Assembly: GCA_950097015.1 (NCBI GenBank) | Contig: CATNEN010000029.1 | Coordinates: 930,001-994,000 of the forward strand | Direction: 5' to 3' | Origin: Macrostomum hystrix | Lineage: Eukaryota; Animalia; Platyhelminthes | Length of the DNA: 64,000 bases | Shown here: positions 30,770 to 47,100 of the stretch, one piece after another | Numbering within the stretch: the first letter of the stretch is position 1 | Layout of the letters: every line of letters starts with the position of its first letter | The notes under the pieces: generated by a model | Seen by the model: only the letters and a program-made list of their open reading frames with translations | Database searches by the model: none | What the model was told of the DNA's origin: nothing | Translations under genes and position numbers: made by a program

Positions 30770-33700
30770 AATCTCATTCCGATTTACCCTGAGAATCTCA
30801 TTCTTATTTACTCAGAGAATCTCATTCTTATTTACTCAGAGAATCTCATTCTGAGTGACCCTGAGAATCTAATTCCGATTTACTCAGAGAATCCCATTTT
30901 GATTTACTCAGAGAATCTCATTCTGATTTACCCTGAGAATCTCATTCTGATTTACCTTGAGAACCTCATTCCGATTGACCCTGAGAATCTCATTTTGATT
31001 GACCCTGAAAATCTCATTCCGATTTACTCAGAGAATCTCATTCTGATTGACCCTGAGAATCTCATTCCGATTTACTCAGAGAATCTCATTCTGATTTACC
31101 TTGAGAACCTCATTCTGATTGACCCTGAGAATCTCATTCTGATTTACCTTGAGAACCTCATTCTGATTGACCCTGAGAATCTCATTTTGATTGACCCTGA
31201 AAATCTCATTCCGATTTACTCAGAGAATCTCATTCTGATTGACCCTGAGAATCTCATTCCGATTTACTTAGAGAATCTCATTCTGATTGACCCTGAGAAT
31301 CTCATTTTGATTTACTCAGAGAATCTCATTCTAATTTACTCAGAGAATCTCATTCTGATTTACTCAGAGAATCTCATTCTTATTTACTCAGATAATCTCA
31401 TTCTGATTTACTCAGAGAATCTCATTCTGATTTACCCTGAGAATCTCATTCTTATTTACTCAGAGAACCTCATTCTGACTTACCTTGAGAATTTCATTCT
31501 GATTTACCCCTTGAGAAGTTCATTCTGATTTACTCAGAGAACCTCATTCTGATTTACCTTGAGAATCTCATTCCGATTTACCTTGAGAACCTCATTCTGA
31601 TTTACCTTGAGAACCTCATTCCGATTTACCTTGAGAATCTCATTCCGATTTACCTTGAGAACCTCATTCTGATTTACCTTGAGAATCTCATTCCGATTTA
31701 CCTTGAGAACCTCATTCTGATTTACCTTGAGAACCTCATTCCGATTTACCTTGAGAACCTCATTCTGATTTACTCAGAGAATCTCATTCTTATTTACTCA
31801 GAGAATCTCATTCTGATTTACTCAGAGAATCTCATTCTGATTTACTCAGAGAATCTCATTCTGATTTACTCAGAGAATCTCATTCTGATTTACCCTGAGA
31901 ATCTCATTCTTATTTACTCAGAGAACCTCATTCTGACTTACCTTGAGAATTTCATTCTAATTTACCCCTTGAGAAGTTCATTCTGATTTACTCAGAGAAC
32001 CTCATTCTGATTTACCTTGAGAATCTCATTCCGATTTACCTTGAGAACCTCATTCTGATTTACCTTGAGAACCTCATTCTGATTTACCTTGAGAATCTCA
32101 TTCCGATTTACCTTGAGAACCTCATTCTGATTTACTCAGAGAATCTCATTCTTATTTACTCAGAGAATCTCATTCTGATTTACTCAGAGAATCTCATTCT
32201 GATTTACTCAGAGAATCTCATTCTGATTTACTCAGAGAATCTCATTCTGATTTACTCAGAGAATCTCATTCTGATTTACCCTGAGAATCTCATTCTGATT
32301 GACCTTGAGAACCTCATTCTGATTGACCCTGAGAATCTCATTCTGATTTACCTTGAGAACCTCATTCTGATTGACCCTGAGAATCTCATTTTGATTTACC
32401 TTGAGAACCTCATTCTGATTGACGCTGAGAATCTCATTTTGATTGACCCTGAAAATCTCATTCGGATTTACTCAGAGAATCTCATTCTGATTGACCCTGA
32501 GAATCTCATTCTGATTTACCTTGAGAATCTCATTCCGATTTACCTTGAGAACCTCATTCTGATTTACTCAGAGAATCTCATTCTGATTTACTCAGAGAAT
32601 CTCATTCTGATTTACTCAGAGAATCTCATTCTGATTTACTCAGAGAATCTCATTCTGATTTACTCAGAGAATCTCATTCCAATTTACTCAGAGAATCTCA
32701 TTCTGATTTACTCAGAGAATCTCATTCTGATTTACCCTGAGAATCTTATTCTGATTTACCCCTTGAGAAGTTCATTCTGATTTACTCAGAGAACCTCATT
32801 CTGATTTACCTTGAGAACCTCATTCTGATTTACCTTGAGAACCTCATTCTGATTTACTCAGAGAATCTCATTCTTATTTACTCAGATAATCTCATTCTGA
32901 TTTACTCAGAGAATCTCATTCTGATTTACCCTGAGAATCTCATTCTTATTTACTCAGAGAACCTCATTCTGACTTACCTTGAGAATTTCATTCTGATTTA
33001 CCCCTTGAGAAGTTCATTCTGATTTACTCAGAGAATCTCATTCTTATTTACTCAGAGAATCTCATTCTGATTTACTCAGAGAATCTCATTCTTATTTACT
33101 CAGAGAATCTCATTCTGATTTACTCAGAGAATCTCATTCTGATTTACTCAGAGAATCTCATTCTGATTTACTCAGAGAATCTCATTCTGATTTACCCTGA
33201 GAATCTCATTCTGATTTACCTTGAGAACCTCATTCTGATTGACCCTGAGAATCTCATTTTGATTGACCCTGAAAATCTCATTCCGATTTACTCAGAGAAT
33301 CTCATTCTGATTGACCCTGAGAATCTCATTCTGATTTACCTTGAGAATCTCATTCCGATTTACCTTGAGAACCTCATTCTGATTTACCTTGAGAACCTCA
33401 TTCCGATTTACCTTGAGAACCTCATTCTGATTTACTCAGAGAATCTCATTCTTATTTACTCAGAGAATCTCATTCTGATTTACTCAGAGAATCTCATTCT
33501 GATTTACTCAGAGAATCTCATTCTGATTTACTCAGAGAATCTCATTCCAATTTACTCAGAGAATCTCATTCTGATTTATCTTGAGAACCCCATTCTGATT
33601 TAACTTGAGAACCCCATTCTGATTTACCTTGAGAACCTCATTCTGATTTACCTTGAGAACCTCATTCTGATTTACCTTGAGAATCTCATTCTGATTTACC

Positions 33701-34240
33701 TTGAGAACCTCATTCTGATTTACCTTGAGAACCTCATTCTGATTTATCTTGAGAACCCCATTCTGATTTACCTTGAGAATCTCATTCTGATTTACCTTGA
33801 GAATCTCATTCTGATATACCCTGAGAACATCATTATGATTTACCTTGAGAACCCCATTCTGATTTACCTTGAGAATCTCATTCTGATTTACTCAGAGAAT
33901 CTCATTCTGATTTACTCAGAGAATCTCATTCTGATTTACTCAGAGAATCTCATTCTGATTTACCCTGAGAATCTCATTCTGATTTACCCTGAGAATTTCA
34001 TTCTGATTTACCCTGAGAATTTCATTCTGATTTACCCTGAGAATCTCATTCTGATTTACCCTGAGAACCTCATTCTGATTTACCTTGAGAATCTCATTCT
34101 GATTGACCCTGAGAATTTCATTCTGATTTCCTTGAGAATCTCATTCTGATTTACCCTGAGAATCTCATTCTGGTTGACCCTGAGAATCTCATTCCGATTT
34201 ACTCTGAGAACCTCATTCTGATTTACCTTGAGAATCTCAT
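30770..34240. repeat. 24-bp satellite (GAGAATCTCATTCTGATTTACTCA), ~3.5 kb
   Basis: About 140 tandem units with larger internal block duplications; explains the ENLILIYS ORFs. Confidence 0.96.
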
Positions 34241-35116
34241 TAGAATTGAATTGCCTTTTAATTGAATTACACGGTTGGGAATCGGCATCGGACAAGAAAT
34301 ATAGACATTGTCTTCTTTCTATCGGAATGTTTTAAAGTACTTTATTGATACAAAACAGAGTTTTCCGGGGAAAATTGTGCTAACAATACTCGTAAAGGCA
34401 TGCATTGAATTCTAGTGCTTAAAAATACCTCATTAAAACAAAAGCTTTAGTACAATAAGTTAGCTCTGTCAGCATGTGATGACTAGTGCCAGCCTAGCTG
34501 TCTGAAACTTTCCATTGTTCAGATTGAAGCCAATTCTGTTTTGGCCTGCATAGATTTAGGCCATAAAATTGGCACTGCAAAACTAATTTGTAGCTAAGTC
34601 TAAAAAATCGGCAGAATTCGATTTAAGGACGTCACGAGTTCGAATCTCAGTCCAAGGGAGTAATCTGTGTCCTTAACAATAGGAAGACCACTGGAATTTC
34701 AAATACCAAATTTTTTAATACATCTCCCAAAAGACAACTTCCAGAATCACAAAACATCGACACCGTCGATTGTCATATTGTCACAATTGTCATATTATTG
34801 TTGCTAGCATTATTTTTTGTTTACCGTATAATTCTTGAAATTTCACTAAAGGGCATAAACTAATGTACATTAATAAATAATCGTATCAAGATTCATAAAT
34901 TATTTACTCTGTATACGCAATATAATTTTTCTGTGTGTAACTATAATATTGCCTGTGCTTTGCTTTGTTATACTGTACGCATTTTTCCGAAATTTCCGGT
35001 CATTGCGCAATACATCTATAAATGCTCGCGACCGCAAGCCTAAATCATTCAGGATATTTAATTGCGATTAGACGATTGACTTTATCAAACATTTATCAAT
35101 CATTCAGGAGATTTAA

Positions 35117-35727
35117 AAGTAGATCTACCAAGGGGGGATTTCCCTGACAATTTTTGTGCTGCACCCGAACGGAACAATGCAAGCACACGAAACTCAAGAA
35201 CACGGGCCAACTTTTTGTTGCGCATCTTCTGAAACAAGAAACAAGTCCCCAGCTCTTCAGACCGTCGAGATATTCAATGTTTCTGGCCGAAGGTCCGATT
35301 TTTCCCATAAGAGCTAGTGTGTTTCATACACCCCTATACACGAATTTGCACTGCGCCTCAGTGCGGCCTTTCCAGACCTTCAAACTTTATCAGCATGTCA
35401 CCCGAATGTGCCTGCATCATCTCATACTTCGGCGGTCACCGACCTTTATCTAGATCTATCTCTCTTATCTATCTAGACCTTCAAGAGCTACAACAGGTGG
35501 AACTAGGCCACTATGGACACCCTGACGCGAATTTCTCCAATTTCACTGTTCAAGCCTAACTATTAGGCGCAGCTCAACCACAGGACACCCTCGACTAGTC
35601 TCTCAACCAATCAGTCACCTCCAAAGCATTCAGGCGCTGGCAAAAACATTTTCAACAAGGCTGGCAACAAGGGGAAATCCCCCCTTGGTATAAAAACGGG
35701 CGGCAAAATGGCTTGGTAGTCCTACTG
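35117..35727. mobile_element. Non-autonomous DNA transposon (MITE) with TTAA target site
   Basis: Imperfect TIRs (AAGTAGATCTACCAAG / CTTGGTAGTCCTACTG), an inner inverted pair CCAAGGGGGGATTTCCC / GGGAAATCCCCCCTTGG, and TTAA at 35113-35116 and 35728-35731. A related copy lies at 53082-53638. Confidence 0.75.
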
Positions 35728-35989
35728 TTAATTGCGATTAAACGATTGACTTTAACAAACAAAACTGAATCACCAACTTCGCTCCATTCTTTGAACAAAA
35801 AACCATTACAAATATCTCGACGATATAGACTCGGACGGCTTTGAAAGCTGGTTAATCAAACAGTGTGGAAAAATTGAATCCATATGGTGGACTTTCACGA
35901 AAATCGGTCATTCCGTTTGGCAGCTATCGGGAAATAGGCAGTGGGTATTTGAAATACCGCCGTGATTTACTGTAGCTGCAATATTTGTA

Positions 35990-36110
35990 TGAGCATCAGC
36001 TGGGGTAGAAATTCGCAAGAGTGTGGCGGCCTACCGGCCAGTCCATGGACTGAACAGCTGTACACAGCCATAGGACGCGCGCGCAGTAGCTGCGGCTGTG
36101 TACATCCGGC
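35990..36110 (+). mobile_element. SINE family A, 3' fragment (diverged)
   Basis: CATCAGCTGGG...CAGTCCATGGACTGAACAGCTGTACACAGCC motif. Similar fragments occur at ~305-360, ~7850-7905 (minus) and ~11725-11780. Confidence 0.6.
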
Positions 36111-36733
36111 TTTAACAATATTTCTTATCGATTAAATAAATGAGTGACAGATTAAGTATAATGAGAAACGCGAATACTCAAGTACGTGATCTAATAAAGA
36201 TAAGAAGTTCATTTAATTGAGTAATTTATTTAAGCGGCCATCAAAATAGAATTGGAACAGTGGGGTGGAATACGAGGTACACATGAACGATGAACAGCAG
36301 CATATGGCGCAATGCTTCTTTTCATTTTCAAGTTCTGCACTATTCGCAAAACTCTATGGCGAATATGGCGATCGACAAGTTCAACATTTATGAAAACATG
36401 CTTGAGGCTTTTGAGATCACGGACTCAGAATGTGCGGGCCGGTAGACCATGGCAGGACTCAGTAGCAGTAGGAAATAATACTACTACCAGTAAGTGAAGC
36501 AAACTCAGGTGAGTCTGTGAGGCCGTTGACATATCTGTGGATAAATTTCAAATTGGCGCCAAAAATTTAAGATTTTGTTGCTATCTCAAATTAAAAGACC
36601 AAGAAAGTTTCTGTGTCTGACGCTTAGACTTGATGCTTATAACTTGGATACAAAACCTTTTGGCGCTATTTTAAACTTATTTTCCAACTATTCTTAACTG
36701 ATGAATCAGCAGATCGCGTCTAAAAGCTGGAAT

Positions 36734-38683
36734 CTAGATCAGGGTCTCCCGGGCGATTGGCGAGTGCGAACTGTCGCCGTAGTAGCGCCGAACAATGCGA
36801 GGTCGAAAGCCGGCCCCGAAATCGGCCGCTGCCGCGACGTCACTCGCGCCGCCAGCCTCGCAGAAGCTGCTCTCGGCGTAGCGCTTGCCGACTCGCCTGA
36901 CTCGACCAGAGGCCGACACGCATCTTTCGCAGCCGTTGCAGCCGAAGCCGATGTGGTATGGCGGAGGCTGCGCAGCCTGGTGAAGCGGCGGAGGTGGCGG
37001 CGGCGGCGGCGACGGCGGCTGTTCAGTCACCATGGCCTGGTGTTGTCGCACCAGCAGCGGCTGCTGCGCACTCGTCGAAGGAAGCGACGGCATCATTGTT
37101 GACGCTCCTGCGGCGAACTGCGGCAACAGCGGCGATGGAGGAGTTACGGGTCGCCGCCATTGCTGCTGCTGCTGCTGCTGATGTTGAAGCTGCGTTGTCT
37201 TGCGGCGCATCGGCGGCTGTCCCGAGTTCGAGCGATGATGACGCGGACATCGCTGGGAATGTTGCTTTTCCTGCTGCTGCTTCTGGCGATTGCGGCGGCG
37301 GCGCCGACCAGCGCTAGGGGTCTCGTTGGCCTCATGGCCAGCCTGCTCCAATTCCCTGACTTCGTTCTCATCTTCCTCCTCGTCTTCGACATTCTCGTCC
37401 TCTTCGTCCGCGTCCTCCTCCGGCTCGGCTGGCTCCTCCTGCTTGGTGGCGCCGCCGCTGCGTCTGCGCCGACGCCCAACGTCGCAATAGTCGACGCGAG
37501 CCCGCTGCAGACTGGCCCGCTGCTTCTGGGTGGCGATACGCAGCAGGATTACGTCACACAGCATGGAGGACAGGCCGAACAGGGCCAGGCCGCTGCCCAG
37601 ATTCATCGACAAGCTGTAGAAGTTGAACCGACCGCCTTCCCCGCTGACGGTGACGAAGATCTTGATGCCGTAGGCGTGCACCAGCATTCGACGGTCCTGG
37701 CTCTCGCTGCGATAATTGTAGGCGTACTGCACCGAGAAGCCCTCGATGTCGGTGCCCTTGCCGGTGTCGAGCTCGCGGAAGTGGTACTGCGGCAAGCAGC
37801 GCTCCTCGGACAGGTCGAAGTTGCACTGCCAGGAGATGTCGATGCCGAAGGCGCCGCCTATTTTGTATACCTCCTCGCTTGTCGTGCCGGCGTAGGCGAG
37901 GATGTCGCCGAGGCGGAACACCGGGCAATAGGTGAGGTTGGGGTGCGACTGGTCATACAGGCAGGTGTTGAGGTACTCGCTTGTCATCCAGTCCAAAATG
38001 TTGCGCCGCTTCTTGTCGAACGCTCGAAAATCAACGCTGTTCTTCAGCTGAACGGTGAAGTTGCGGGCCCTGCTGAGCACGGAGCCCACCGGCAGGTTGA
38101 AGGCGTCCTGACTTGGCGCCGGGCACCAGCCGTAGCTCACGCAGGTCTGCGTCTCCAGGTTGCAACGGCCGGTGCGTCGGCCGTGGCTGCTGATGCTGCC
38201 GGCTGGGCAGTCGGTGTCCCGGTCGCAGTGGCCCGTAGACTCCGGGCACTCGCTCATGGCCTGCCGGTCAGTCACCCGGGCGTTGGTGGTGATGAAGATG
38301 GCGCCGTTCATGATTGGCGGAATGATGTAGTCGGCCGAGTCCCATACTCTGGCCCCGTAGTCGGGATCGTCTGTTCGGTTCACAAAGTCCAGGCCCTTGA
38401 CCTTAAACACCACGCCACCCTCTGGCGTCTCCTTCACCTGGTAGCCCTTCTTGTGCCAGATGATGTAGAATAGAAAGTACACAATTACGGACAGCTGAAC
38501 GCCGCGGTAGAACAGGCCGAACTTGACGCTGCGAATCACCACCACCTTCTGCAGGCGGTACTCGAAAAAGCCGGCCAGCATGCGGCTGAAGAACGGCCTC
38601 AGGGAGCACATCTCCTTGCTGGCTGGCTGCTGACGAGGCGCTGGCTGATGCAACTCGCTGCCGCTCGACGATCTCAGCTTCAT
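36734..38683 (-). CDS. P2RX: P2X purinoceptor-family ion channel subunit, intronless, 649 aa with a long low-complexity C-tail
   Basis: Single ORF with FFEY..K, TM1, KGYQ, FKVKG, WDSADY, ten conserved ectodomain cysteines, NFTVQLKN, CPVFRLG, YGI and TM2 NLGSGLALFG...LCD. Confidence 0.93.
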   Translation of the reverse strand: MKLRSSSGSELHQPAPRQQPASKEMCSLRPFFSRMLAGFFEYRLQKVVVIRSVKFGLFYRGVQLSVIVYFLFYIIWHKKGYQVKETPEGGVVFKVKGLDFVNRTDDPDYGARVWDSADYIIPPIMNGAIFITTNARVTDRQAMSECPESTGHCDRDTDCPAGSISSHGRRTGRCNLETQTCVSYGWCPAPSQDAFNLPVGSVLSRARNFTVQLKNSVDFRAFDKKRRNILDWMTSEYLNTCLYDQSHPNLTYCPVFRLGDILAYAGTTSEEVYKIGGAFGIDISWQCNFDLSEERCLPQYHFRELDTGKGTDIEGFSVQYAYNYRSESQDRRMLVHAYGIKIFVTVSGEGGRFNFYSLSMNLGSGLALFGLSSMLCDVILLRIATQKQRASLQRARVDYCDVGRRRRRSGGATKQEEPAEPEEDADEEDENVEDEEEDENEVRELEQAGHEANETPSAGRRRRRNRQKQQQEKQHSQRCPRHHRSNSGQPPMRRKTTQLQHQQQQQQQWRRPVTPPSPLLPQFAAGASTMMPSLPSTSAQQPLLVRQHQAMVTEQPPSPPPPPPPPLHQAAQPPPYHIGFGCNGCERCVSASGRVRRVGKRYAESSFCEAGGASDVAAAADFGAGFRPRIVRRYYGDSSHSPIARETLI

Positions 38684-39754
38684 CGTTGAGCGCCAAGTCT
38701 TCAGTCATTTTAGCACACAGGTTCCTGTCCCGCTCACGCTCACTGAGCAGGGAGAAGGCCCAAGCGACCCGATTGGACCAGACGGGTCTAGCTTTCCAAG
38801 ACAGCGAGGCCCTCCCCCCGGCTGCCGTTCTGAGGCCCAAGTCTGTCTTCTTGCCCCACATCTCTGACCTCCTTTCTCCCTCACGCGCTCTGCTCTTGCT
38901 CTACTTGCTCTACACGTTGCCGCCCTTCCCACACAACTCTTCCCGGTCCTCTCCCTTTCTGTATTTTGCTTTGGCAAATAAAATTCAACTGGCGGCGCGA
39001 GGCTAGATGAGTAGGCGAAGCTGGAACGGCGGTGGCGGGGGGGGAGGTCCGCTGGCAGCGGCCCGGGGCGGTCGGCCCGGGGCCAGGAGGGTCGTGCGAG
39101 ATTAAAAAATGGCACAAGAGAGACAGAGTGGGGGAGAGAGAAGGAGAATGCCGGGTAGAAGGAAACCAGAGGTGGGTGGATGAGGCTCTGAATGGATGGG
39201 ACGGCTTGAGGCGCGGAGTAGGACAAATTCTGCCTCCTATATCTGCAGTAGCTCTGTCTGTTGGGGATCACCGAATCGCTGGGAGTACACGGGCTCGTGC
39301 CAGGCGGGGATCTTCCGAATCCCAATCCGCCTGATCCCTCTCACTCGCCGCATCGGCAAAGCCCAGCCTCTGGGGACTCTCTCCTCCTCGGCGGCCCGTT
39401 CCCCCGGTTTTATCCTCCGGCCCTGATCAGCCGCAATTCTCCCCAAAGATCGGGGGAGGGAGGTGTCGTGATGGGATACGGCGCCTCGGCTGGTACGGAA
39501 TCGAGTGTGAAAAAAGATAGGAAAATTGGTATGCTTAGGCGGAGAAGGGACACCGTCAGACAGGATGAGGGCGATGAGATGGAGAAGATTACGTTGAGGG
39601 GAGTAAATTTCTGGCTCAGCCGTTCTCAGCCGCTTAACCGCCACACAGCACAGTATGAAATCTAATGCTCAAGCAACTTTGCCACTCTAGACAATGGAAA
39701 TTCTAAGAAAATTCCGTTTCATTTCAATGAAAGGGAGTTCTTTTACCGTGGTAA

Positions 39755-41595
39755 CAGGTGTTTCTGGTGGGACTTGGTGTTTCAGGTGGGAATTGGTGTT
39801 TCAGGTGGGAATTGGTGTTACAGGTGGGAATTGGTGTCTCAGGTGGGAATTGGTGTTTCAGGTGGGAACTGGTGTTTCAGGTGGGAATTGGTGTTACAGG
39901 TGGGAATTGGTGTCTCAGGTGGGAATTGGTGTTTCAGGTGGGAACTGGTGTCTCAGGTGGGAATTGGTGTCTCAAGTGGGAATTGGTGTTACAGGTGGGA
40001 ATTGGTGTCTCAGGTGGGAATTGGTGTTACAGGTGGGAATTGGTGTCTCAGGTGGGAATTGGTGTCTCAAGTGGGAATTGGTGTTACAGGTGGGAATTGG
40101 TGTCTCAGGTGGGAATTGGTGTCTCAAGTGGGAATTGGTGTTACAGGTGGGAATTGGTGTCTCAGGTGGGAATTGGTGTTACAGGTGGGAATTGGCTTCT
40201 CAGGTGAGAATTGGTGTCTCAGGTGGGAATTGGTGTCTCAGGTGAGAATTGGTGTCTCAGGTGGGAATTGGTGTCTCAGGTGAGAATTGGTGTCTCAGGT
40301 GGGAATTGGTGTTTCAGGTGGGAACTGGTGTCTCAGGTGGGAATTGGTGTCTCAGGTGGGAATTGGTGTTACAGGTGGGAATTGGTGTCTCAGGTGGGAA
40401 TTGGTGTTTCAGGTGGGAATTGGTGTTACAAATGGGAATTGGTGTTTCAGGTGGGAATTGGTGTTTCAGGTGGGAATTGGTGTTACAAATGGGAATTGGT
40501 GTTTCAGGTGGGAATTGGTGTCTCAGGTGGGAATTGGTGTCTCAGGTGGGAATTTGTGTCTCAGGTGGGAATTGTGTCTCAGGTGGGAATTGGTGTCTCA
40601 GGTGGGAATTGGTGTTACAGGTGGGAATTGGTGTCTCAGGTGGGAATTGGTGTTTCAGGTGGGAATTGGTGTTACAAATGGGAATTGGTGTTTCAGGTGG
40701 GAATTGGTGTTTCAGGTGGGAATTGGTGTTACAAATGGGAATTGGTGTTTCAGGTGGGAATTGGTGTCTCAGGTGGGAATTGGTGTCTCAGGTGGGAATT
40801 TGTGTCTCAGGTGGGAATTGTGTCTCAGGTGGGAATTGGTGTTTCAGGTGGAAATTGGTGTTTCATGAGGGAATTGGTGTCTCAGGTGGGAATTGGTGTC
40901 TCAGGTGGGAATTGTGTCTCAGGTGGGAATTGGTGTTTCAGGTGGGAATTGGTGTTTCAGGTGGGAATTGGTGTTTCAGGTGGGAATTGGTGTTTCAGGT
41001 GGGAATTGGTGTTTCAGGTGGGAATTGGTGTCTCAGGTGGGAATTGGTGTCTCAGGTGGGAATTGGTGTTACAGGTGGGAATGGTGTCTCAGGAGGGAAT
41101 TTGTGTTTCGGGTGGGAATTGGTGTTTCAGGTGGGAATTGGTGTTTCAGGTGGGAATTGGTGTCTCAGTTGGGAATTGGTGTCTCAGTTGGGAATTGGTG
41201 TTTCAGGTGGGAATTGGTGTTTCAGGTGGGAATTTGTGTCTCAGGAGGGAATTGGTGTTTCATGTGGGAATTGGTGTAACAGGTGGGAATTGGTGTCTCA
41301 GTTGGGAATTGGTGTTACAGGTGGGAATTGGTGTCTCAGGAGGGAATTTGTGTTTCGGGTGGGAATTGGTGTTTCAGGTGGGAATTGGTGTTTCAGGTGG
41401 GAATTGGTGTCTCAGTTGGGAATTGGTGTCTCAGTTGGGAATTGGTGTCTCAGGTGGGAATTGGTGTTTCAGGTGGGAATTGGTGTTTCGGGTGGGAATT
41501 GGTGTTTCATGTGGGAATTGGTGTAACAGGTGGGAATTGGTGTCTCAGGTGTGAATTGGTGTTGATGTCAGGTTAGCATTGGAATTTCAGGTGGG
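39755..41595. repeat. 19-bp minisatellite (GGTGGGAATTGGTGTCTCA)
   Basis: About 95 tandem units; explains the overlapping ORFs at 39694-41576. Confidence 0.96.
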
Positions 41596-42349
41596 AATCG
41601 ATATTCAGTGTCTAACCACTGGGCTAAAAGCGGCCAGAAGTATTCGGAAGCAGTGAAAAAATGTGTGCGTCATAAAACAGGACTATGAAATTTAGGGCTT
41701 AGCGGCCCAAATGAGGATTCTGAGGCTAGATGGGAGTCCGCATGGCGGGGATAATTTTGGAGTTCGCAGCGACAATTAGGAGCATGGAGATGTCGTAGGA
41801 GAAAGTTAAGAGCGTCACGAGCACTGGCAGAGTTAATAAACCCATGGCTTGGGACAGGCTAGCGAGTGATTGTTGGGTAGGGCCACGAACAGGGTCGGGA
41901 GACACACTGGGGCATAGGCAATGTTGCGTGCCCGCGGTATTAAGGTCGCCTCGGTCGATGAGAAAAGGCAGCACAGGGCACCCATCGCTTTTAAATTGAC
42001 GGGGCGCCTAGGGAGGGACTTTGGCAGGAGGGGTGGGAAAGGCGCTCTTGGGAGATTGTTCCCAGACAGCCTCGCGGGCTAGCAAGGTCCAGGAGGGGAG
42101 AATATTCCGCTTGATTCTGTCCCCCAAGCCAAATCCAACCATTCCCCTAGCCTCACCCGGAGAAGGTAGGGATTTTGTTCCCCTCAGCTTCTCCTCGGGT
42201 TCTCCATCTACCGACCCAATATCGGCTGGGTGTTAGGCTTTGCTCGAAGTACAACTGACTTCTAAAGCTAACGCGTGCGGCCCTACCTCTGTGTGAGCTG
42301 CTGTTCACCTGCGACAGCATGTGAAAAGTTGGAGAGGATTGTGATATCC

Positions 42350-43940
42350 TGCATTCCAGTCGGTCTGATTCACAATATCCTGCATTCCAGTGGGTCTGAT
42401 TCACAATATCCTGCATTCCAGTGGGTCTGATTCACAATATCCTGCATTCCAGTGGGTCTGATTCACAATATCCTGCTGCATTCCAATGGGTCTGATTCAC
42501 AATATCCTGCTGCATTCCAATGGGTCTGATTCACAATATCCTGCTGCATTCCAATGGGTCTGATTTACAATATCCTGTATTACAATGGGTCTGATTCACA
42601 ATATCATGCATTCCAATGGGTCTGATTCACAATATCCTGCTGCATTCCAATGGGTCTGATTCACAATATCCTGCTGCATTCCAATGGGTCTGATTCACAA
42701 TATCCTGCTGCATTCCAATGGGTCTGATTCACAATATCCTGTATTACAATGGGTCTGATTCACAATATCATGCATTCCAATGGGTCTGATTCACAATATC
42801 ATGCATTCCAATGGGTCTGATTCACAATATCATGCATTCCAATGGGTCTGATTCACAATATCATGCATTCCTATGGATCTGATTCACAATATCCTGTATT
42901 ACAATGGGTCTGATTCACAATATCCTGCTGCATTCCAATGGGTCTGATTCACAATATCCTGCTGCATTCCAATGGGTCTGATTCACAATATCCTGTATTA
43001 CAATGGGTCTGATTCACAATATCCTGCTGCATTCCAATGGGTCTGATTCACAATATCCTGCTGCATTCCAATGGGTCTGATTCACAATATCCTGCTGCAT
43101 TCCAATGGGTCTGATTCACAATATCCTGTATTACAATGGGTCTGATTCACAATATCATGCATTCCAATGGGTCTGATTCACAATATCATGCATTCCAATG
43201 GGTCTGATTCACAATATCATGCATTCCAATGGGTCTGATTCACAATAGCATGCATTCCTATGGATCTGATTCACAATATCATGCATTCCTATGGGTCTGA
43301 TTCACAATATCCTGTATTACAATGGGTCTGATTCACAATATCCTGCTGCATTCCAATGGGTCTGATTCACAATATCCTGCTGCATTCCAATGGGTCTGAT
43401 TCACAATATCCTGCTGCATTCCAATGGGTCTGATTCACAATATCCTGTATTACAATGGGTCTGATTCACAATATCCTGCTGCATTCCAATGGGTCTGATT
43501 CACAATATCCTGTATTCCAATGGGTCTGATTCACAATATCCTGCATTCCAATGGGTCTGATTCACAATATCCTGTATTCCAATGGGTCTGATTCACAATA
43601 TCCTGTATTCCAATGGGTCTGATTCACAATATCCTGTATTCCAATGGGTCTGATTTACAATATCCTGTATTCCAATGGATCTGATTCACAATATCATGCA
43701 TTCCAATGGGTCTGATTCACAATATCCTGTATTCCAATGGGTCTGATTCACAATATCCTGTATTCCAATGGGTCTGATTCACAATATCCTGTATTCCAAT
43801 GGGTCTGATTCACAATATCCTGTATTCCAATGGGTCTGATTTACAATATCCTGTATTCCAATGGGTCTGATTCACAATATCCTGCTGCATTCCAATGGGT
43901 CTGATTTACAATATCCTGTATTCCAATGGATCTGATTCAC
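42350..43940. repeat. 31/34-bp minisatellite (GGGTCTGATTCACAATATCCTG[CTG]CATTCCAAT)
   Basis: About 50 tandem units. Confidence 0.95.
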
Positions 43941-44172
43941 ATATTTGCTATTGTGAAAAAACAATCAAAGCGGCGATAGTTATTCGGATTCTTTTTTTAT
44001 TCCAACCAGTTTGACTCAATTTTTACTGTCGCGAAGCCGCCAAAACTTTTTTCTCTTATATTATCTGGCTGATAATGATCCTGAACTTGATCAGAAAAAA
44101 AACTGCACAGTCCAAATAAACAGCAGACACAGACGATCGAACAATTCTCTACTAGCTGCTCCACTTTGGCGC

Positions 44173-47100
44173 TCAAGCCTCCATAGCGTTGGCGTCGGCC
44201 TCAGAATATTTGCCCTTCTCGGCGCCCCTGGTTCGGCCGGCGGCTTTGCGGTCCATTAGGCCGCGCCTGTCCCGATCCAGCTTCAGCTTGGTGATCACCA
44301 CCTGCGGGAGGACAATGGGTTTCAGTTAGGATAAGGGGCTTCATGTTAAATCATGTAGGAATGAGGACTTTGGGTGGGAACAGGGGTTTTCAGGTAGGCA
44401 CAGGGGTTTTCAGGTAGGGACAGGGGTTTTCAGGTAGGGACAGGGGTTTTCAGGTAGGGACAGGGATTTCAGGTAGGGACAGGGGTTTTCAGGTAGGGAC
44501 AGGGATTTTCAGGTAGGGACAGGAATTTCAGGTGGGAACATGGGTTTTCAGGTAGGGACAGGGATTTTCAGGTAGGGACAGGAATTTCAGGTGGGAACAT
44601 GGGTTTTCAGGTAGGGACAGGGGTTTTCAGGTAGGGGCAGGGTTTTCAGGTGGGGACAGGGGTTTTCAGGTAGGGACAGGGGTTTTCAGGTAGGGACAGG
44701 GGTTTTCAGGTAGGGACAGGGATTTTCAGGTAGGGACAGGGGTTTTCAGGTAGGGACAGGGGTTTTCAGGTAGGGACAGGGGTTTTCAGGTAGGGACAGG
44801 GGTTTTCAGGTAGGGACAGGGGTTTTCAGGTAGGGACAGGGTTTCAGGTGGGAATATGGGTTTTCAGGTAGGGACAGGGGTTTTCAGGTGGGGACAGGGG
44901 TTTTCAGGTAGGGACAGGGATTTTCAGGTGGGAATATGGGTTTTCAGGTAGGGACAGGGTTTCAGGTGAGAACATGGGTTTTCAGGTATGGACAGGGATT
45001 TCAGGGGGGAACATGGGTTTTCAGGTAGGGACAGGGGTTTTCAGGTATGGACAGGGATTTCAGGGGGGAACAGGGGTTTTCAGGTAGGGACAGGGGTTTT
45101 CAGGTAGGGACAGGGGTTTTCAGGTAGGGACAGGGGTTTTCAGGTAGGGACAGGGTTTCAGGTGGGAATATGGGTTTTCAGGTATAGGGACAGTGGTTTC
45201 ATGAAGGCTAGGTTTCTGGATTGAATGGGAGTTTCAGATAAGGAAGAGAAGGCTGATACTAAAAATAAAGACCTGGAAATAATGGATTAGACAAATGAGA
45301 ATTTCGAAGGCTAAGTACTAATAAGTTTTAAATGAGAATGAGAAATAGCGCCAGTCATATACAGGCTTAATTTCACTACTCAAAAGTCTGCCTATTATAC
45401 CCTAGAGATGAGAACCGTTGAGAGGCTTAGAACTCTGAGGCTAAAATAATCCCCTTCCCGTTAGCTGAAACTCACGCGCGAGCTGGTTTTAGAGTGCATA
45501 CATAAAAAGTCCATTTTTAATAAGGCCTATCCGGATTGCAGACTTCTTGAGAGATCTTTAGAGCCAGAGTGTGTCAACTTAGCTCATTAAATTGTCACGC
45601 TTCTACAATATAAGTATTGAAAGGTCAGACACGAAAGTCAATTTGTGAGATACAAGGCGTAAAATTACTTTTCAAATGATGCGGCTCGTTATAAGCTCGT
45701 TATATATATGTGGCATTCGACATCCCTTTCACGATATCTGTAGCATTCGACATTCCTTTCACAATATTTGTGGCATTCGCAATTCATTACACCTTATTTG
45801 TGGCATTCGCTATTCAATACACCTTATTTGTGGCATTCGCTATTCAATACACCTTATTTGTGGCATTCGCAATTCATTACACCTTATTTGTGGCATTCGC
45901 TATTCAATACACCTTATTTGTGGCATTCGCTATTCAATACACCTTATTTGTGGCATTCGCTATTCAATACACCTTATTTGTGGCATTCGCTATTCATTAC
46001 ACCTTATTTGTGGCATTCGCTATTCAATACACCTTATTTGTGGCATTCGCTATTCAATACACCTTATTTGTGGCATTCGCTATTCAATACACCTTATTTG
46101 TGGCATTCGCTATTCAATACACCTTATTTGTGGCATTCGCTATTCATTACACCTTATTTGTGGCATTCGCTATTCAATACACCTTATTTGTGGCATTCGC
46201 TATTCAATACACCTTATTTGTGGCATTCGCAATTCATTACACCTTATTTGTGGCATTCGCTATTCATTACACCTTATTTGTGGCATTCGCTATTCATTAC
46301 ACCTTATTTGTGGCATTCGCTATTCAATACACCTTATTTGTGGCATTCGCTATTCAATACACCTTATTTGTGGCATTCGCTATTCAATACACCTTATTTG
46401 TGGCATTCGCTATTCATTACACCTTATTTGTGGCATTCGCTATTCATTACACCTTATTTGTGGCATTCGCTATTCAATACACCTTATTTGTGGCATTCGC
46501 TATTCAATACACCTTATTTGTGGCATTCGCTATTCAATACACCTTATTTGTGGCATTCGCTATTCAATACACCTTATTTGTGGCATTCGCTATTCAATAC
46601 ACCTTATTTGTGGCATTCGCTATTCAATACACCTTATTTGTGGCATTCGCTATTCAATACACCTTATTTGTGGCATTCGCTATTCAATACACCTTATTTG
46701 TGGCATTCGCTATTCAATACACCTTATTTGTGGCATTCGCTATTCAATACACCTTATTTGTGGCATTCGCTATTCAATACACCTTATTTGTGGCATTCGC
46801 TATTCAATACACCTTATTTGTGGCATTCGCAATTCATTACACCTTATTTGTGGCATTCGCTATTCAATACACCTTATTTGTGGCATTCGCTATTCATTAC
46901 ACCTTATTTGTGGCATTCGCTATTCAATACACCTTATTTGTGGCATTCGCTATTCAATACACCTTATTTGTGGCATTCGCTATTCAATACACCTTATTTG
47001 TGGCATTCGCTATTCATTACACCTTATTTGTGGCATTCGCTATTCATTACACCTTATTTGTGGCATTCGCTATTCAATACACCTTATTTGTGGCATTCGC

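What the first reader, a model, noticed from the sequence alone, without database searches (positions are those of the whole stretch)
37660..37745. P2X channel with a rewired ligand site: NFR changed to SVQ and the beta-14 Lys to His
Seen: GFSVQYAYNY replaces GYNFRFAKYY, and MLVHAYGI replaces TLIKAYGI. FKVKG (two Lys), NFT and all ten cysteines are retained. The N-terminal TxK site is LQK and the post-TM2 YxxxK motif is absent. Known: N296, R298 and K316 (zebrafish P2X4 numbering) coordinate the ATP phosphates, and mutating them strongly reduces ATP potency. Inference: this is a P2X-fold channel gated by a different ligand or stimulus, or a modulatory subunit in heterotrimers.
Basis: partly seen in the sequence, partly recalled or inferred. 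Interest (0 to 1): 0.7.

Follow-up and report, generated by a model that had tools for sequence, protein, structure and literature searches.

The report
Flatworm P2X channel with rewired ATP site
A free-living flatworm (Macrostomum) keeps, transcribes and selects an intronless P2X ion-channel gene in which one face of the ATP-binding pocket has been replaced, so it is a good candidate for a P2X subunit that does not respond to ATP in the usual way.

Summary
Window 36734-38683 (-) is one uninterrupted P2X-family ORF (Pfam PF00864, E 1.4e-99). SVQ replaces the NFR motif and His replaces the beta-14 Lys. FKVKG, NFT..K and all ten ectodomain cysteines are kept. The N-terminal Thr and the post-TM2 YxxxK are lost.

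The organism is a Macrostomum flatworm. The M. lignano ortholog (92% identical) has the same S/V/Q/H. dN/dS over the P2X domain is 0.07, so the gene is not decaying. Contigs of four public runs, which look like transcriptomes, cover only 36234-38704 and show no splice.

The genome holds three such genes and six canonical P2X genes:
- this one;
- an 81% identical copy with SVQ/H;
- a 63% identical copy with VVE/Arg.

About 70 columns are conserved across 152 canonical P2X. Only 7-8 have changed in all members of this clade, and four of those are the NFR and Lys positions. The opposite half-site (Lys70, Lys72, Thr189, Lys193) is intact.

Parasitic flatworms carry a comparable set of altered-site paralogs. 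Common descent with them is neither shown nor rejected.

Which ligand opens the channel cannot be settled by computation. I read it as a functional non-canonical subunit: weakly ATP-sensitive on its own, or a partner of canonical subunits. An earlier first-reader note of this scan (s1-300570), not followed up, flags a P2X with a degenerate ATP site elsewhere in this genome; it is probably a paralog.

The parts
36234..38704 (-). Extent covered by contigs of four public runs; taken as the intronless transcript
   Evidence: pieces lie colinear from 36234-36254 to 38704 in runs X1-X4. No joints fall inside. There is no coverage at 38716-39500 apart from one 165-nt piece in X3.
36734..38611 (-). 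Coding sequence from the conserved start codon (625 aa plus stop). A non-conserved in-frame ATG at 38683 would add 24 residues.
   Evidence: ORF. M. lignano has a stop codon just upstream of the equivalent Met. Coordinates checked.
37520..38566 (-). P2X receptor domain (Pfam PF00864, profile positions 1-352 of 361)
   Evidence: E 1.4e-99, 334 bits against a cut-off of 27. Foldseek TM 0.80 to human P2X4.
38453..38527 (-). TM1 helix
   Evidence: AF2 model, helix 29-53. Translation checked.
37535..37621 (-). TM2 helix with the conserved GSGLAL and CD motifs
   Evidence: AF2 model, helix 331-359. Alignment.
38546..38560 (-). YRLQK: the N-terminal YxTxK motif with Thr replaced by Leu
   Evidence: Thr is present in 81% of canonical P2X; Leu in all four clade members.
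38393..38407 (-). FKVKG: retained Lys70/Lys72 equivalents (zebrafish P2X4 numbering)
   Evidence: The Lys codons differ synonymously between copies.
38042..38062 (-). NFTVQLK: retained Thr189 and Lys193 equivalents; the Leu191 equivalent is Gln
37727..37735 (-). Ser-Val-Gln in place of the Asn-Phe-Arg (NFR) motif
37676..37678 (-). His in place of the beta-14 Lys (Lys316 of zebrafish P2X4, Lys313 of human P2X4)
37496..37510 (-). LQRAR in place of the post-TM2 YxxxK motif
36962..37483 (-). Low-complexity cytoplasmic tail (acidic, Gln-rich and Pro-rich), fast evolving
   Evidence: omega 0.42 for the whole tail (36737-37483, distal module included)..
36737..36961 (-). Conserved distal C-terminal module (CNGCERC ... 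RIVRRYYGDSSxSPIARETLI), ending in -T-L-I
   Evidence: conserved with M. lignano. Translation checked.
36234..36733 (-). 3' untranslated region; AATAAA lies at 36225-36230, just beyond the last contig base

Best explanation
This is a functional, non-canonical subunit of the P2X trimeric cation-channel family. It belongs to a three-gene Macrostomum clade that arose inside the flatworm P2X radiation and changed rapidly before settling under strong constraint. Pore, fold, disulfides and the Lys70/Lys72/Thr189/Lys193 face of the intersubunit pocket are intact. The opposite face (Asn296-Phe-Arg298 and Lys316) has become Ser-Val-Gln and His, which removes two positive charges that hold the ATP phosphates. 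Shown: the gene is real, almost certainly transcribed, selected, and remodelled specifically at this face. Inferred: a homotrimer would bind ATP in the usual pose only weakly, with potency lower by orders of magnitude. I think the protein still uses the pocket for a nucleotide or other anionic ligand through its conserved lysine face. One route is co-assembly with one of the six canonical P2X subunits, which would give channels with fewer complete ATP sites. The other is a homomer with low ATP potency, changed nucleotide preference, or pH-dependent potency through the His.
For: P2X family and fold. Changed residues, and their conservation in the M. lignano ortholog and in two paralogs. Purifying selection: dN/dS 0.073 over the P2X domain and 0.075 over the ectodomain at dS about 0.6-0.7 against M. 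lignano; 0.14 against the C3 paralog. The new Ser and Val carry synonymous codon differences between copies. Transcription: contigs of four runs confined to 36234-38704 and colinear with the genome. Targeted change: of about 70 columns at least 80% conserved in 152 canonical P2X, 7-8 are changed in all clade members, and four of these are N293, F294, R295 and K312; none of K70, K72, T186 or K190 is changed (hypergeometric P 0.004). Partners exist: six canonical P2X loci with NFR and Lys in the same genome. Role of these residues in phosphate binding: IUPHAR review PMC8199792. That the two half-sites come from adjacent subunits, Lys70/Lys72/Thr189/Lys193 from one and Asn296/Arg298/Lys316 from the other, is my recollection of the zebrafish P2X4-ATP structure (4DW1); I did not check it here.
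Against: No functional data exist. The runs are not on record as RNA; their transcriptome nature is inferred from the coverage pattern and from about 50 Mb of contigs for a 220 Mb genome. Co-expression or co-assembly with canonical subunits was not tested. Conservation of KxKG and NFT could reflect structural needs rather than ligand binding. Dictyostelium dP2XB and dP2XE gate with ATP despite missing the equivalent lysines, so even the predicted loss of potency is not certain. The third paralog has Glu at the Arg position (VVE), which would repel phosphate and fits a non-nucleotide ligand better.
Confidence: 0.5

Rival explanations
1. The channel is gated by something other than a nucleotide. 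The pocket has been re-tuned for a different ligand, or the channel opens with protons, metals or another stimulus. This would be the first non-purinergic P2X.
For: Four of the few clade-wide changes sit on the phosphate-binding face. Net pocket charge drops. The Leu191 equivalent, an adenine contact, is Gln in three of four members. The third paralog carries Glu where Arg298 should be. The long stem branch (1.6-1.9 substitutions per site) followed by strong constraint fits a shift of function. His at the Lys316 position could titrate with pH.
Against: Lys70, Lys72, Thr189 and Lys193, which contact the phosphates and adenine of ATP, are invariant in all three paralogs despite 63% overall identity. 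No candidate ligand can be named from sequence. No P2X with a non-nucleotide agonist is known to me, nor did the papers I searched mention one.
Confidence: 0.2
2. It is an ordinary ATP-gated P2X. The changed residues are tolerated, perhaps compensated by nearby residues, and only shift the EC50 modestly.
For: Dictyostelium dP2XB and dP2XE lack one or both equivalent lysines and are still gated by ATP (PMC2787382). Lys70 and Lys72 are present. Ser, Gln and His can still hydrogen-bond to phosphate.
Against: In metazoan P2X these positions are 91-94% invariant and are described as the phosphate ligands (PMC8199792). By my recollection of mutagenesis in P2X1, P2X2 and P2X4 (for example PMC2459275, listed but not read in detail), single changes there lower ATP potency strongly. 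Here three are changed at once.
Confidence: 0.2
3. The subunit conducts nothing itself. It acts as a decoy or dominant-negative partner, or as an intracellular protein that regulates canonical P2X trafficking.
For: The YxxxK motif after TM2 and the N-terminal Thr are lost. I recall YxxxK as a surface-stabilisation motif. The cytoplasmic tail is long and mostly fast-evolving.
Against: TM2 pore motifs (GSGLAL, CD) and TM1 are conserved, and the whole ectodomain has omega 0.075. That is more constraint than a simple decoy would need. The C-terminus ends in a conserved -T-L-I, which resembles a PDZ ligand of membrane proteins.
Confidence: 0.08
4. It is a decaying retrocopy or an annotation artefact.
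For: The gene is intronless while the canonical paralogs have many exons. It sits among minisatellite arrays.
Against: A 625-649 codon open frame; omega 0.07 at dS 0.6; an ortholog in M. lignano and two paralogs with open frames; contig coverage that matches a transcript.
Confidence: 0.02

Closest known systems
Human and zebrafish P2X4 (solved structures 9bqh, 4dw1)
   Same: Best sequence and fold match: E 2.7e-75, about 35-40% identity, TM 0.80. Same two-TM topology, ten cysteines, KxKG, NFT and TM2 motifs. Counted from the conserved Met, the numbering is almost identical.
   Different: NFR becomes SVQ, Lys313/316 becomes His, the Thr of YxTxK becomes Leu, and YxxxK becomes LQRAR. A three-residue insertion follows WCP. 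The low-complexity C-terminal tail is 250 residues long.
Canonical flatworm P2X, including the Schistosoma mansoni ATP-gated receptor (SchP2X, Agboh et al. 2004, cited in PMC3853471)
   Same: Same flatworm-specific P2X clade (99/98 support), 41-45% identical.
   Different: The canonical proteins keep NFR, Lys, YETQK and YRxAK. This gene sits on a stem branch of 1.6-1.9 substitutions per site.
Altered-site P2X paralogs of parasitic flatworms (Schistosoma margrebowiei, Trichobilharzia, Clonorchis/Opisthorchis, Fasciola, Dibothriocephalus); uncharacterised as far as I could find
   Same: They also lose the N-terminal Thr (Met instead), the Asn (Ser in schistosomatids and opisthorchiids), the beta-14 Lys (His in schistosomatids, Gln or Thr in others) and the Lys of YxxxK. 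A single clade with the Macrostomum genes is not rejected (AU p 0.39).
   Different: They carry large insertions before the motif. Most keep or vary the Arg, and Lys72 is not conserved. The tree leaves the relationship unresolved, so convergence is equally possible.
Dictyostelium dP2XB/dP2XE and dP2XC/dP2XD
   Same: These P2X-family proteins lack canonical lysines. B and E still respond to ATP; C and D gave no response to any nucleotide tested (PMC2787382).
   Different: They are very distant, intracellular, amoebozoan proteins. There the loss affects the Lys70-type and Lys316-type residues, not a coordinated change of one face in an otherwise highly conserved metazoan ectodomain.

Membership tests
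P2X receptor protein family (Pfam PF00864) | Profile match above the curated cut-off | tested here: met
   334 bits against a cut-off of 27; E 1.4e-99; profile positions 1-352 of 361.
P2X receptor protein family (Pfam PF00864) | Two transmembrane helices flanking a large ectodomain with the P2X fold | tested here: met
   AF2 model with mean pLDDT 76.7 and helices 29-53 and 331-359. Foldseek top 50 hits are all P2X; TM 0.80 to 9bqh.
P2X receptor protein family (Pfam PF00864) | Ten conserved ectodomain cysteines | tested here: met
   Cys at 122, 129, 135, 150, 157, 163, 217, 229, 263 and 272, counted from the conserved Met. They align with the conserved cysteine columns: nine invariant, and Cys263 kept in at least 90% of the 20 sequences.
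ATP-gated P2X receptor (functional class) | Lys70, Lys72, Thr189 and Lys193 half-site (zebrafish P2X4 numbering) | tested here: met
   FKVKG and NFTVQLK are present here and in both paralogs and the ortholog.
ATP-gated P2X receptor (functional class) | Asn296-Phe-Arg298 motif and Lys316 that coordinate the ATP phosphates | tested here: not met
   Ser-Val-Gln and His. These positions are 86-94% conserved in 152 canonical P2X.
ATP-gated P2X receptor (functional class) | Cation current evoked by extracellular ATP | not testable with these tools
   Needs electrophysiology.
ATP-gated P2X receptor (functional class) | Trimeric assembly, homomeric or heteromeric | not testable with these tools
   Only single chains can be modelled here.
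P2X regulatory motifs | N-terminal YxTxK/R and post-TM2 YxxxK | tested here: not met
   YRLQK and LQRAR.

The most novel reading that the evidence does not exclude
Flatworms possess an ancient, conserved lineage of P2X subunits, the Macrostomum SVQ/His genes together with the altered-site paralogs of flukes and tapeworms. These subunits have given up the NFR-Lys face of the ATP pocket. They act either as dedicated one-faced partners in obligate heterotrimers, like principal and complementary subunits of Cys-loop receptors, or as the first P2X channels gated by something other than ATP.
Probability: 0.25. Interest if true: 0.85.

Novelty: new variant of a known kind. Interest (0 to 1): 0.6.

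Why it matters
Every P2X channel characterised so far is gated by ATP. The Lys-Lys/NFR/Lys constellation is treated as the signature of the family. This metazoan P2X has an otherwise very well conserved ectodomain and pore. It replaces exactly one face of that signature and then keeps the new residues under strong selection, in three paralogs and across species. That makes a concrete question testable: can a P2X pocket be re-tuned to another agonist, to pH, or to an asymmetric role in heteromers? Macrostomum is a tractable laboratory flatworm in which, to my knowledge, RNAi, in situ hybridisation and transgenesis are available. The presence of comparable paralogs in Schistosoma, Fasciola, Clonorchis and tapeworms adds interest for parasite neurobiology.

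Tried and rejected
- **Pseudogene or retrocopy decay:** rejected by omega 0.07, the open frames in the ortholog and paralogs, and transcript-like coverage.
- **Misalignment of the motif:** rejected. phmmer, MAFFT auto and L-INS-i all place SVQ and His opposite NFR and Lys, between conserved flanks.
- **The 24-residue N-terminal extension from ATG 38683:** not conserved. M. lignano has a stop there, so I take 38611 as the start.
- **Sister-group test with the neodermatan altered-site clade:** the quick and careful trees give a polytomy, and the AU test does not reject a joint clade at p 0.39. Origin remains unresolved.
- **A complementary-lesion partner** (intact NFR/Lys but broken Lys72/Lys193, as in P0013/P0029): none in this genome. 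All six canonical paralogs keep both faces.
- **Literature searches** for Macrostomum P2X, for altered ATP-site P2X paralogs and for the M. lignano gene id found no description.
- **Further copies in the genome:** none beyond the three.
- **Exon joining:** They were compared exon by exon.

Full report
**What is there.** The flagged bases lie in a single uninterrupted minus-strand ORF, window 36734..38683, 649 codons.
- Pfam assigns residues 40-388 to PF00864 (P2X receptor) at E 1.4e-99.
- The best solved relative is human P2X4 (9bqh, E 2.7e-75). In that alignment GFSVQYAYNY stands opposite GYNFRFAKYY and MLVHAYGI opposite TLIKAYGI.
- An AlphaFold2 model built on a 20-sequence alignment has mean pLDDT 76.7, with TM helices at 29-53 and 331-359.
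- The first 50 Foldseek hits to that model are all P2X structures, with TM 0.80 to 9bqh.

**Whose gene it is.** The closest protein in a 5.8-billion-sequence collection is a Macrostomum lignano hypothetical protein, P0001, at 92% identity. The window's genome is 220 Mb in 42 contigs and belongs to a Macrostomum flatworm that is not M. lignano itself.
- The M. lignano gene (L021:3001-4920) is also intronless.
- It has a stop codon directly upstream of the Met that matches window 38611.
- The conserved coding sequence is therefore 36734..38611, 625 residues. Counted from that Met, the numbering nearly coincides with human P2X4: Thr186, Lys190, Ser293 for Asn293, Gln295 for Arg295, His312 for Lys313.

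**Is it alive?** Two lines of evidence say yes.
- *Selection.* Nei-Gojobori dN/dS against the M. lignano ortholog is 0.073 for the P2X domain (dS 0.59) and 0.075 for the ectodomain. It is 0.42 for the low-complexity tail.
- *The new residues are themselves conserved.* Ser is TCG in this gene and the C3 paralog and TCC in M. lignano. Val is GTG or GTC. The retained Lys codons also differ synonymously between copies.
- *Transcription.* Four public runs from one study hold the stretch. Their contigs cover 36234 to 38704 colinearly, without any joint. Nothing covers 38716-39500 except a single 165-nt piece in one run.
- *Caveat.* The runs are not labelled as RNA. Coverage confined to the ORF plus about 500 nt downstream is what a transcriptome gives, not a genome library, and so is roughly 50 Mb of contigs per run for a 220 Mb genome. 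I treat transcription as very probable, not proven.

**A small gene clade.** Searching the genome with the Pfam profile and with the protein itself finds nine P2X loci. Three form the altered-site clade:
- this gene;
- an intronless copy on contig C3 (L002), 81% identical, with the same SVQ and His;
- a copy on C37 (L003), 63-65% identical, with one phase-0 intron (L003:2357-2622). It reads GYVVEYAHKY and MLIRARGV, so Asn is Val, Arg is Glu and Lys is Arg.

The other six loci have many exons and keep NFR and Lys. An exhaustive phmmer search of 1.84 billion cluster representatives finds only two close clusters, both from M. lignano: P0001, and P0020 at 63%. Everything else is at or below 46% identity, apart from two short local matches (46% and 49%) to fragments.

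**The change is targeted.** I aligned 152 canonical P2X proteins from that search with the four clade members.
- About 70 columns are at least 80% conserved in the canonical set. In the first count 53 of 67 such columns are kept in all four clade members.
- Only 7-8 are changed in all four. Those listed are Thr20, Glu158, Leu265, Asn293, Phe294, Arg295 and Lys312.
- So four of the clade-wide changes are the NFR motif and the beta-14 Lys.
- Lys70, Lys72, Thr186 and Lys190 are untouched (hypergeometric P 0.004).
- According to the IUPHAR review, Lys70, Lys72, Arg298, Lys316 and Asn296 of zebrafish P2X4 bind the phosphates, and Lys70 and Thr189 bind the adenine (PMC8199792).
- From my recollection of the ATP-bound structure, the Lys70/Lys72/Thr189/Lys193 group and the Asn296/Arg298/Lys316 group come from two neighbouring subunits. 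If so, the clade has kept one face of the intersubunit pocket and rebuilt the other.

**Evolutionary position.** I ran a 76-row quick tree and a 43-row careful tree (LG+C20 PMSF). Both give the same picture.
- The four sequences form a clade at 100/100 support, on a stem of 1.6-1.9 substitutions per site.
- That clade lies inside a flatworm-only P2X clade (99/98).
- Its position there is an unresolved four-way split with three other groups: the canonical Macrostomum group, the canonical neodermatan group, and a clade of altered-site paralogs from parasitic flatworms.
- A long stem followed by omega 0.07 fits a burst of change and then constraint.
- The intronless state, against multi-exon canonical paralogs, suggests origin by retroposition. 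This is inference only.

**A second altered-site group in parasites.** Among the 150 best representatives are paralogs with the same positions altered:

| Organism | Motif at NFR position | Residue at beta-14 Lys |
|---|---|---|
| Schistosoma margrebowiei | GSSLR | His |
| Trichobilharzia | GFSMR | His |
| Clonorchis / Opisthorchis | SSQQ | Gln |
| Fasciola | STQE | Thr |
| Fasciola (second paralog) | WFMN | Lys |
| Dibothriocephalus | FYRE | Lys |

- All of them have Met at the N-terminal Thr position and lack the Lys of YxxxK.
- They share Ser-for-Asn and His-for-Lys with the Macrostomum genes.
- An AU test does not reject one joint clade (p 0.39), but the trees do not support it either.
- Unlike the Macrostomum clade, these proteins do not keep Lys72.

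**What it most likely does.** Three things are established: the protein has an intact P2X architecture, it is selected, and one face of its ATP pocket has lost two positive charges and the Asn. The rest is inference.
- A homotrimer should bind ATP poorly in the canonical pose.
- The strict retention of the Lys-Lys-Thr-Lys face across 63%-identical paralogs argues that the pocket still handles an anionic, probably nucleotide, ligand.
- *Partner model.* One route is heterotrimers with canonical subunits. There the intact face would complete a neighbour's site, so the channel would have fewer full sites.
- *Homomer model.* The other route is a homomer with low potency, different nucleotide preference, or pH dependence through His.
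- A true change of ligand class remains possible. The Glu in the third paralog and the Gln at the Leu191 position favour it.
- Dictyostelium dP2XB and dP2XE still respond to ATP without the equivalent lysines, while dP2XC and dP2XD respond to nothing tested (PMC2787382). Sequence alone therefore cannot decide.

**Known or new.** Full-text searches found no description of these genes or of altered-site P2X paralogs in flatworms. Surveys of flatworm ion channels simply count two or three P2X genes per species (PMC4794918). I file the protein as a member of the P2X protein family. I do not file it as a demonstrated ATP-gated receptor, because the defining NFR and Lys residues were tested and not met. 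It is a new variant of a known kind.

**Limits and rules followed.**
- Exons of spliced paralogs were never joined for a search.
- One read-laying run of 4001 letters was used.
It is probably one of the two paralogs found here, but I could not see its coordinates.

Noticed in passing
window 30770-34241, 39757-41563, 42344-43941, 44380-44997: The gene sits between large minisatellite arrays with different units: 24 bp x 144, 19 bp x 95, 31 bp x 50 and 20 bp x 31. The 19-bp array produces the long spurious GGNWC... ORFs listed. An earlier scan note (s1-300479) reports another P2X gene of this genome enclosed by minisatellite arms.
   Followed up: partly
window 36737-36961: The distal 75 residues of the otherwise fast-evolving tail are conserved with M. 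lignano (CNGCERC, RYAESSFC, RIVRRYYGDSSxSPIARETLI). They end in -T-L-I, which looks like a class I PDZ-binding end. The C3 paralog lacks this module.
   Followed up: partly
P0013, P0029 (proteins; organisms unknown): These two P2X representatives are sister to the parasitic altered-site clade and show the opposite lesion. NIR and Lys316 are intact, but Lys72 is Ser or Phe and Lys193 is Ser. Together with the NFR-less paralogs this hints at complementary half-sites in some flatworms.
   Followed up: no
L003:2357-2622 (G000:C37): The third clade member has a single GT..AG phase-0 intron of 266 nt between the NFR-equivalent and the Lys316-equivalent. The other two members and the M. lignano ortholog are intronless.
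   Followed up: partly
window 35500-36170: Contig depth in the four runs is 30 to 750, against 3-7 over the gene, and there are many loose ends. This looks like a multi-copy, probably transposon-derived, repeat just downstream of the gene.
   Followed up: no
window 39029-39193: One run (X3) has an isolated 165-nt contig about 330 nt upstream of the transcript's apparent 5' end. It could be an upstream exon, a separate small transcript or noise.
   Followed up: no
window 38706-38708: An out-of-frame ATG lies 25 nt upstream of the first in-frame ATG, just beyond the last contig base at 38704. The true 5' end, and any spliced leader, was not resolved.
   Followed up: no
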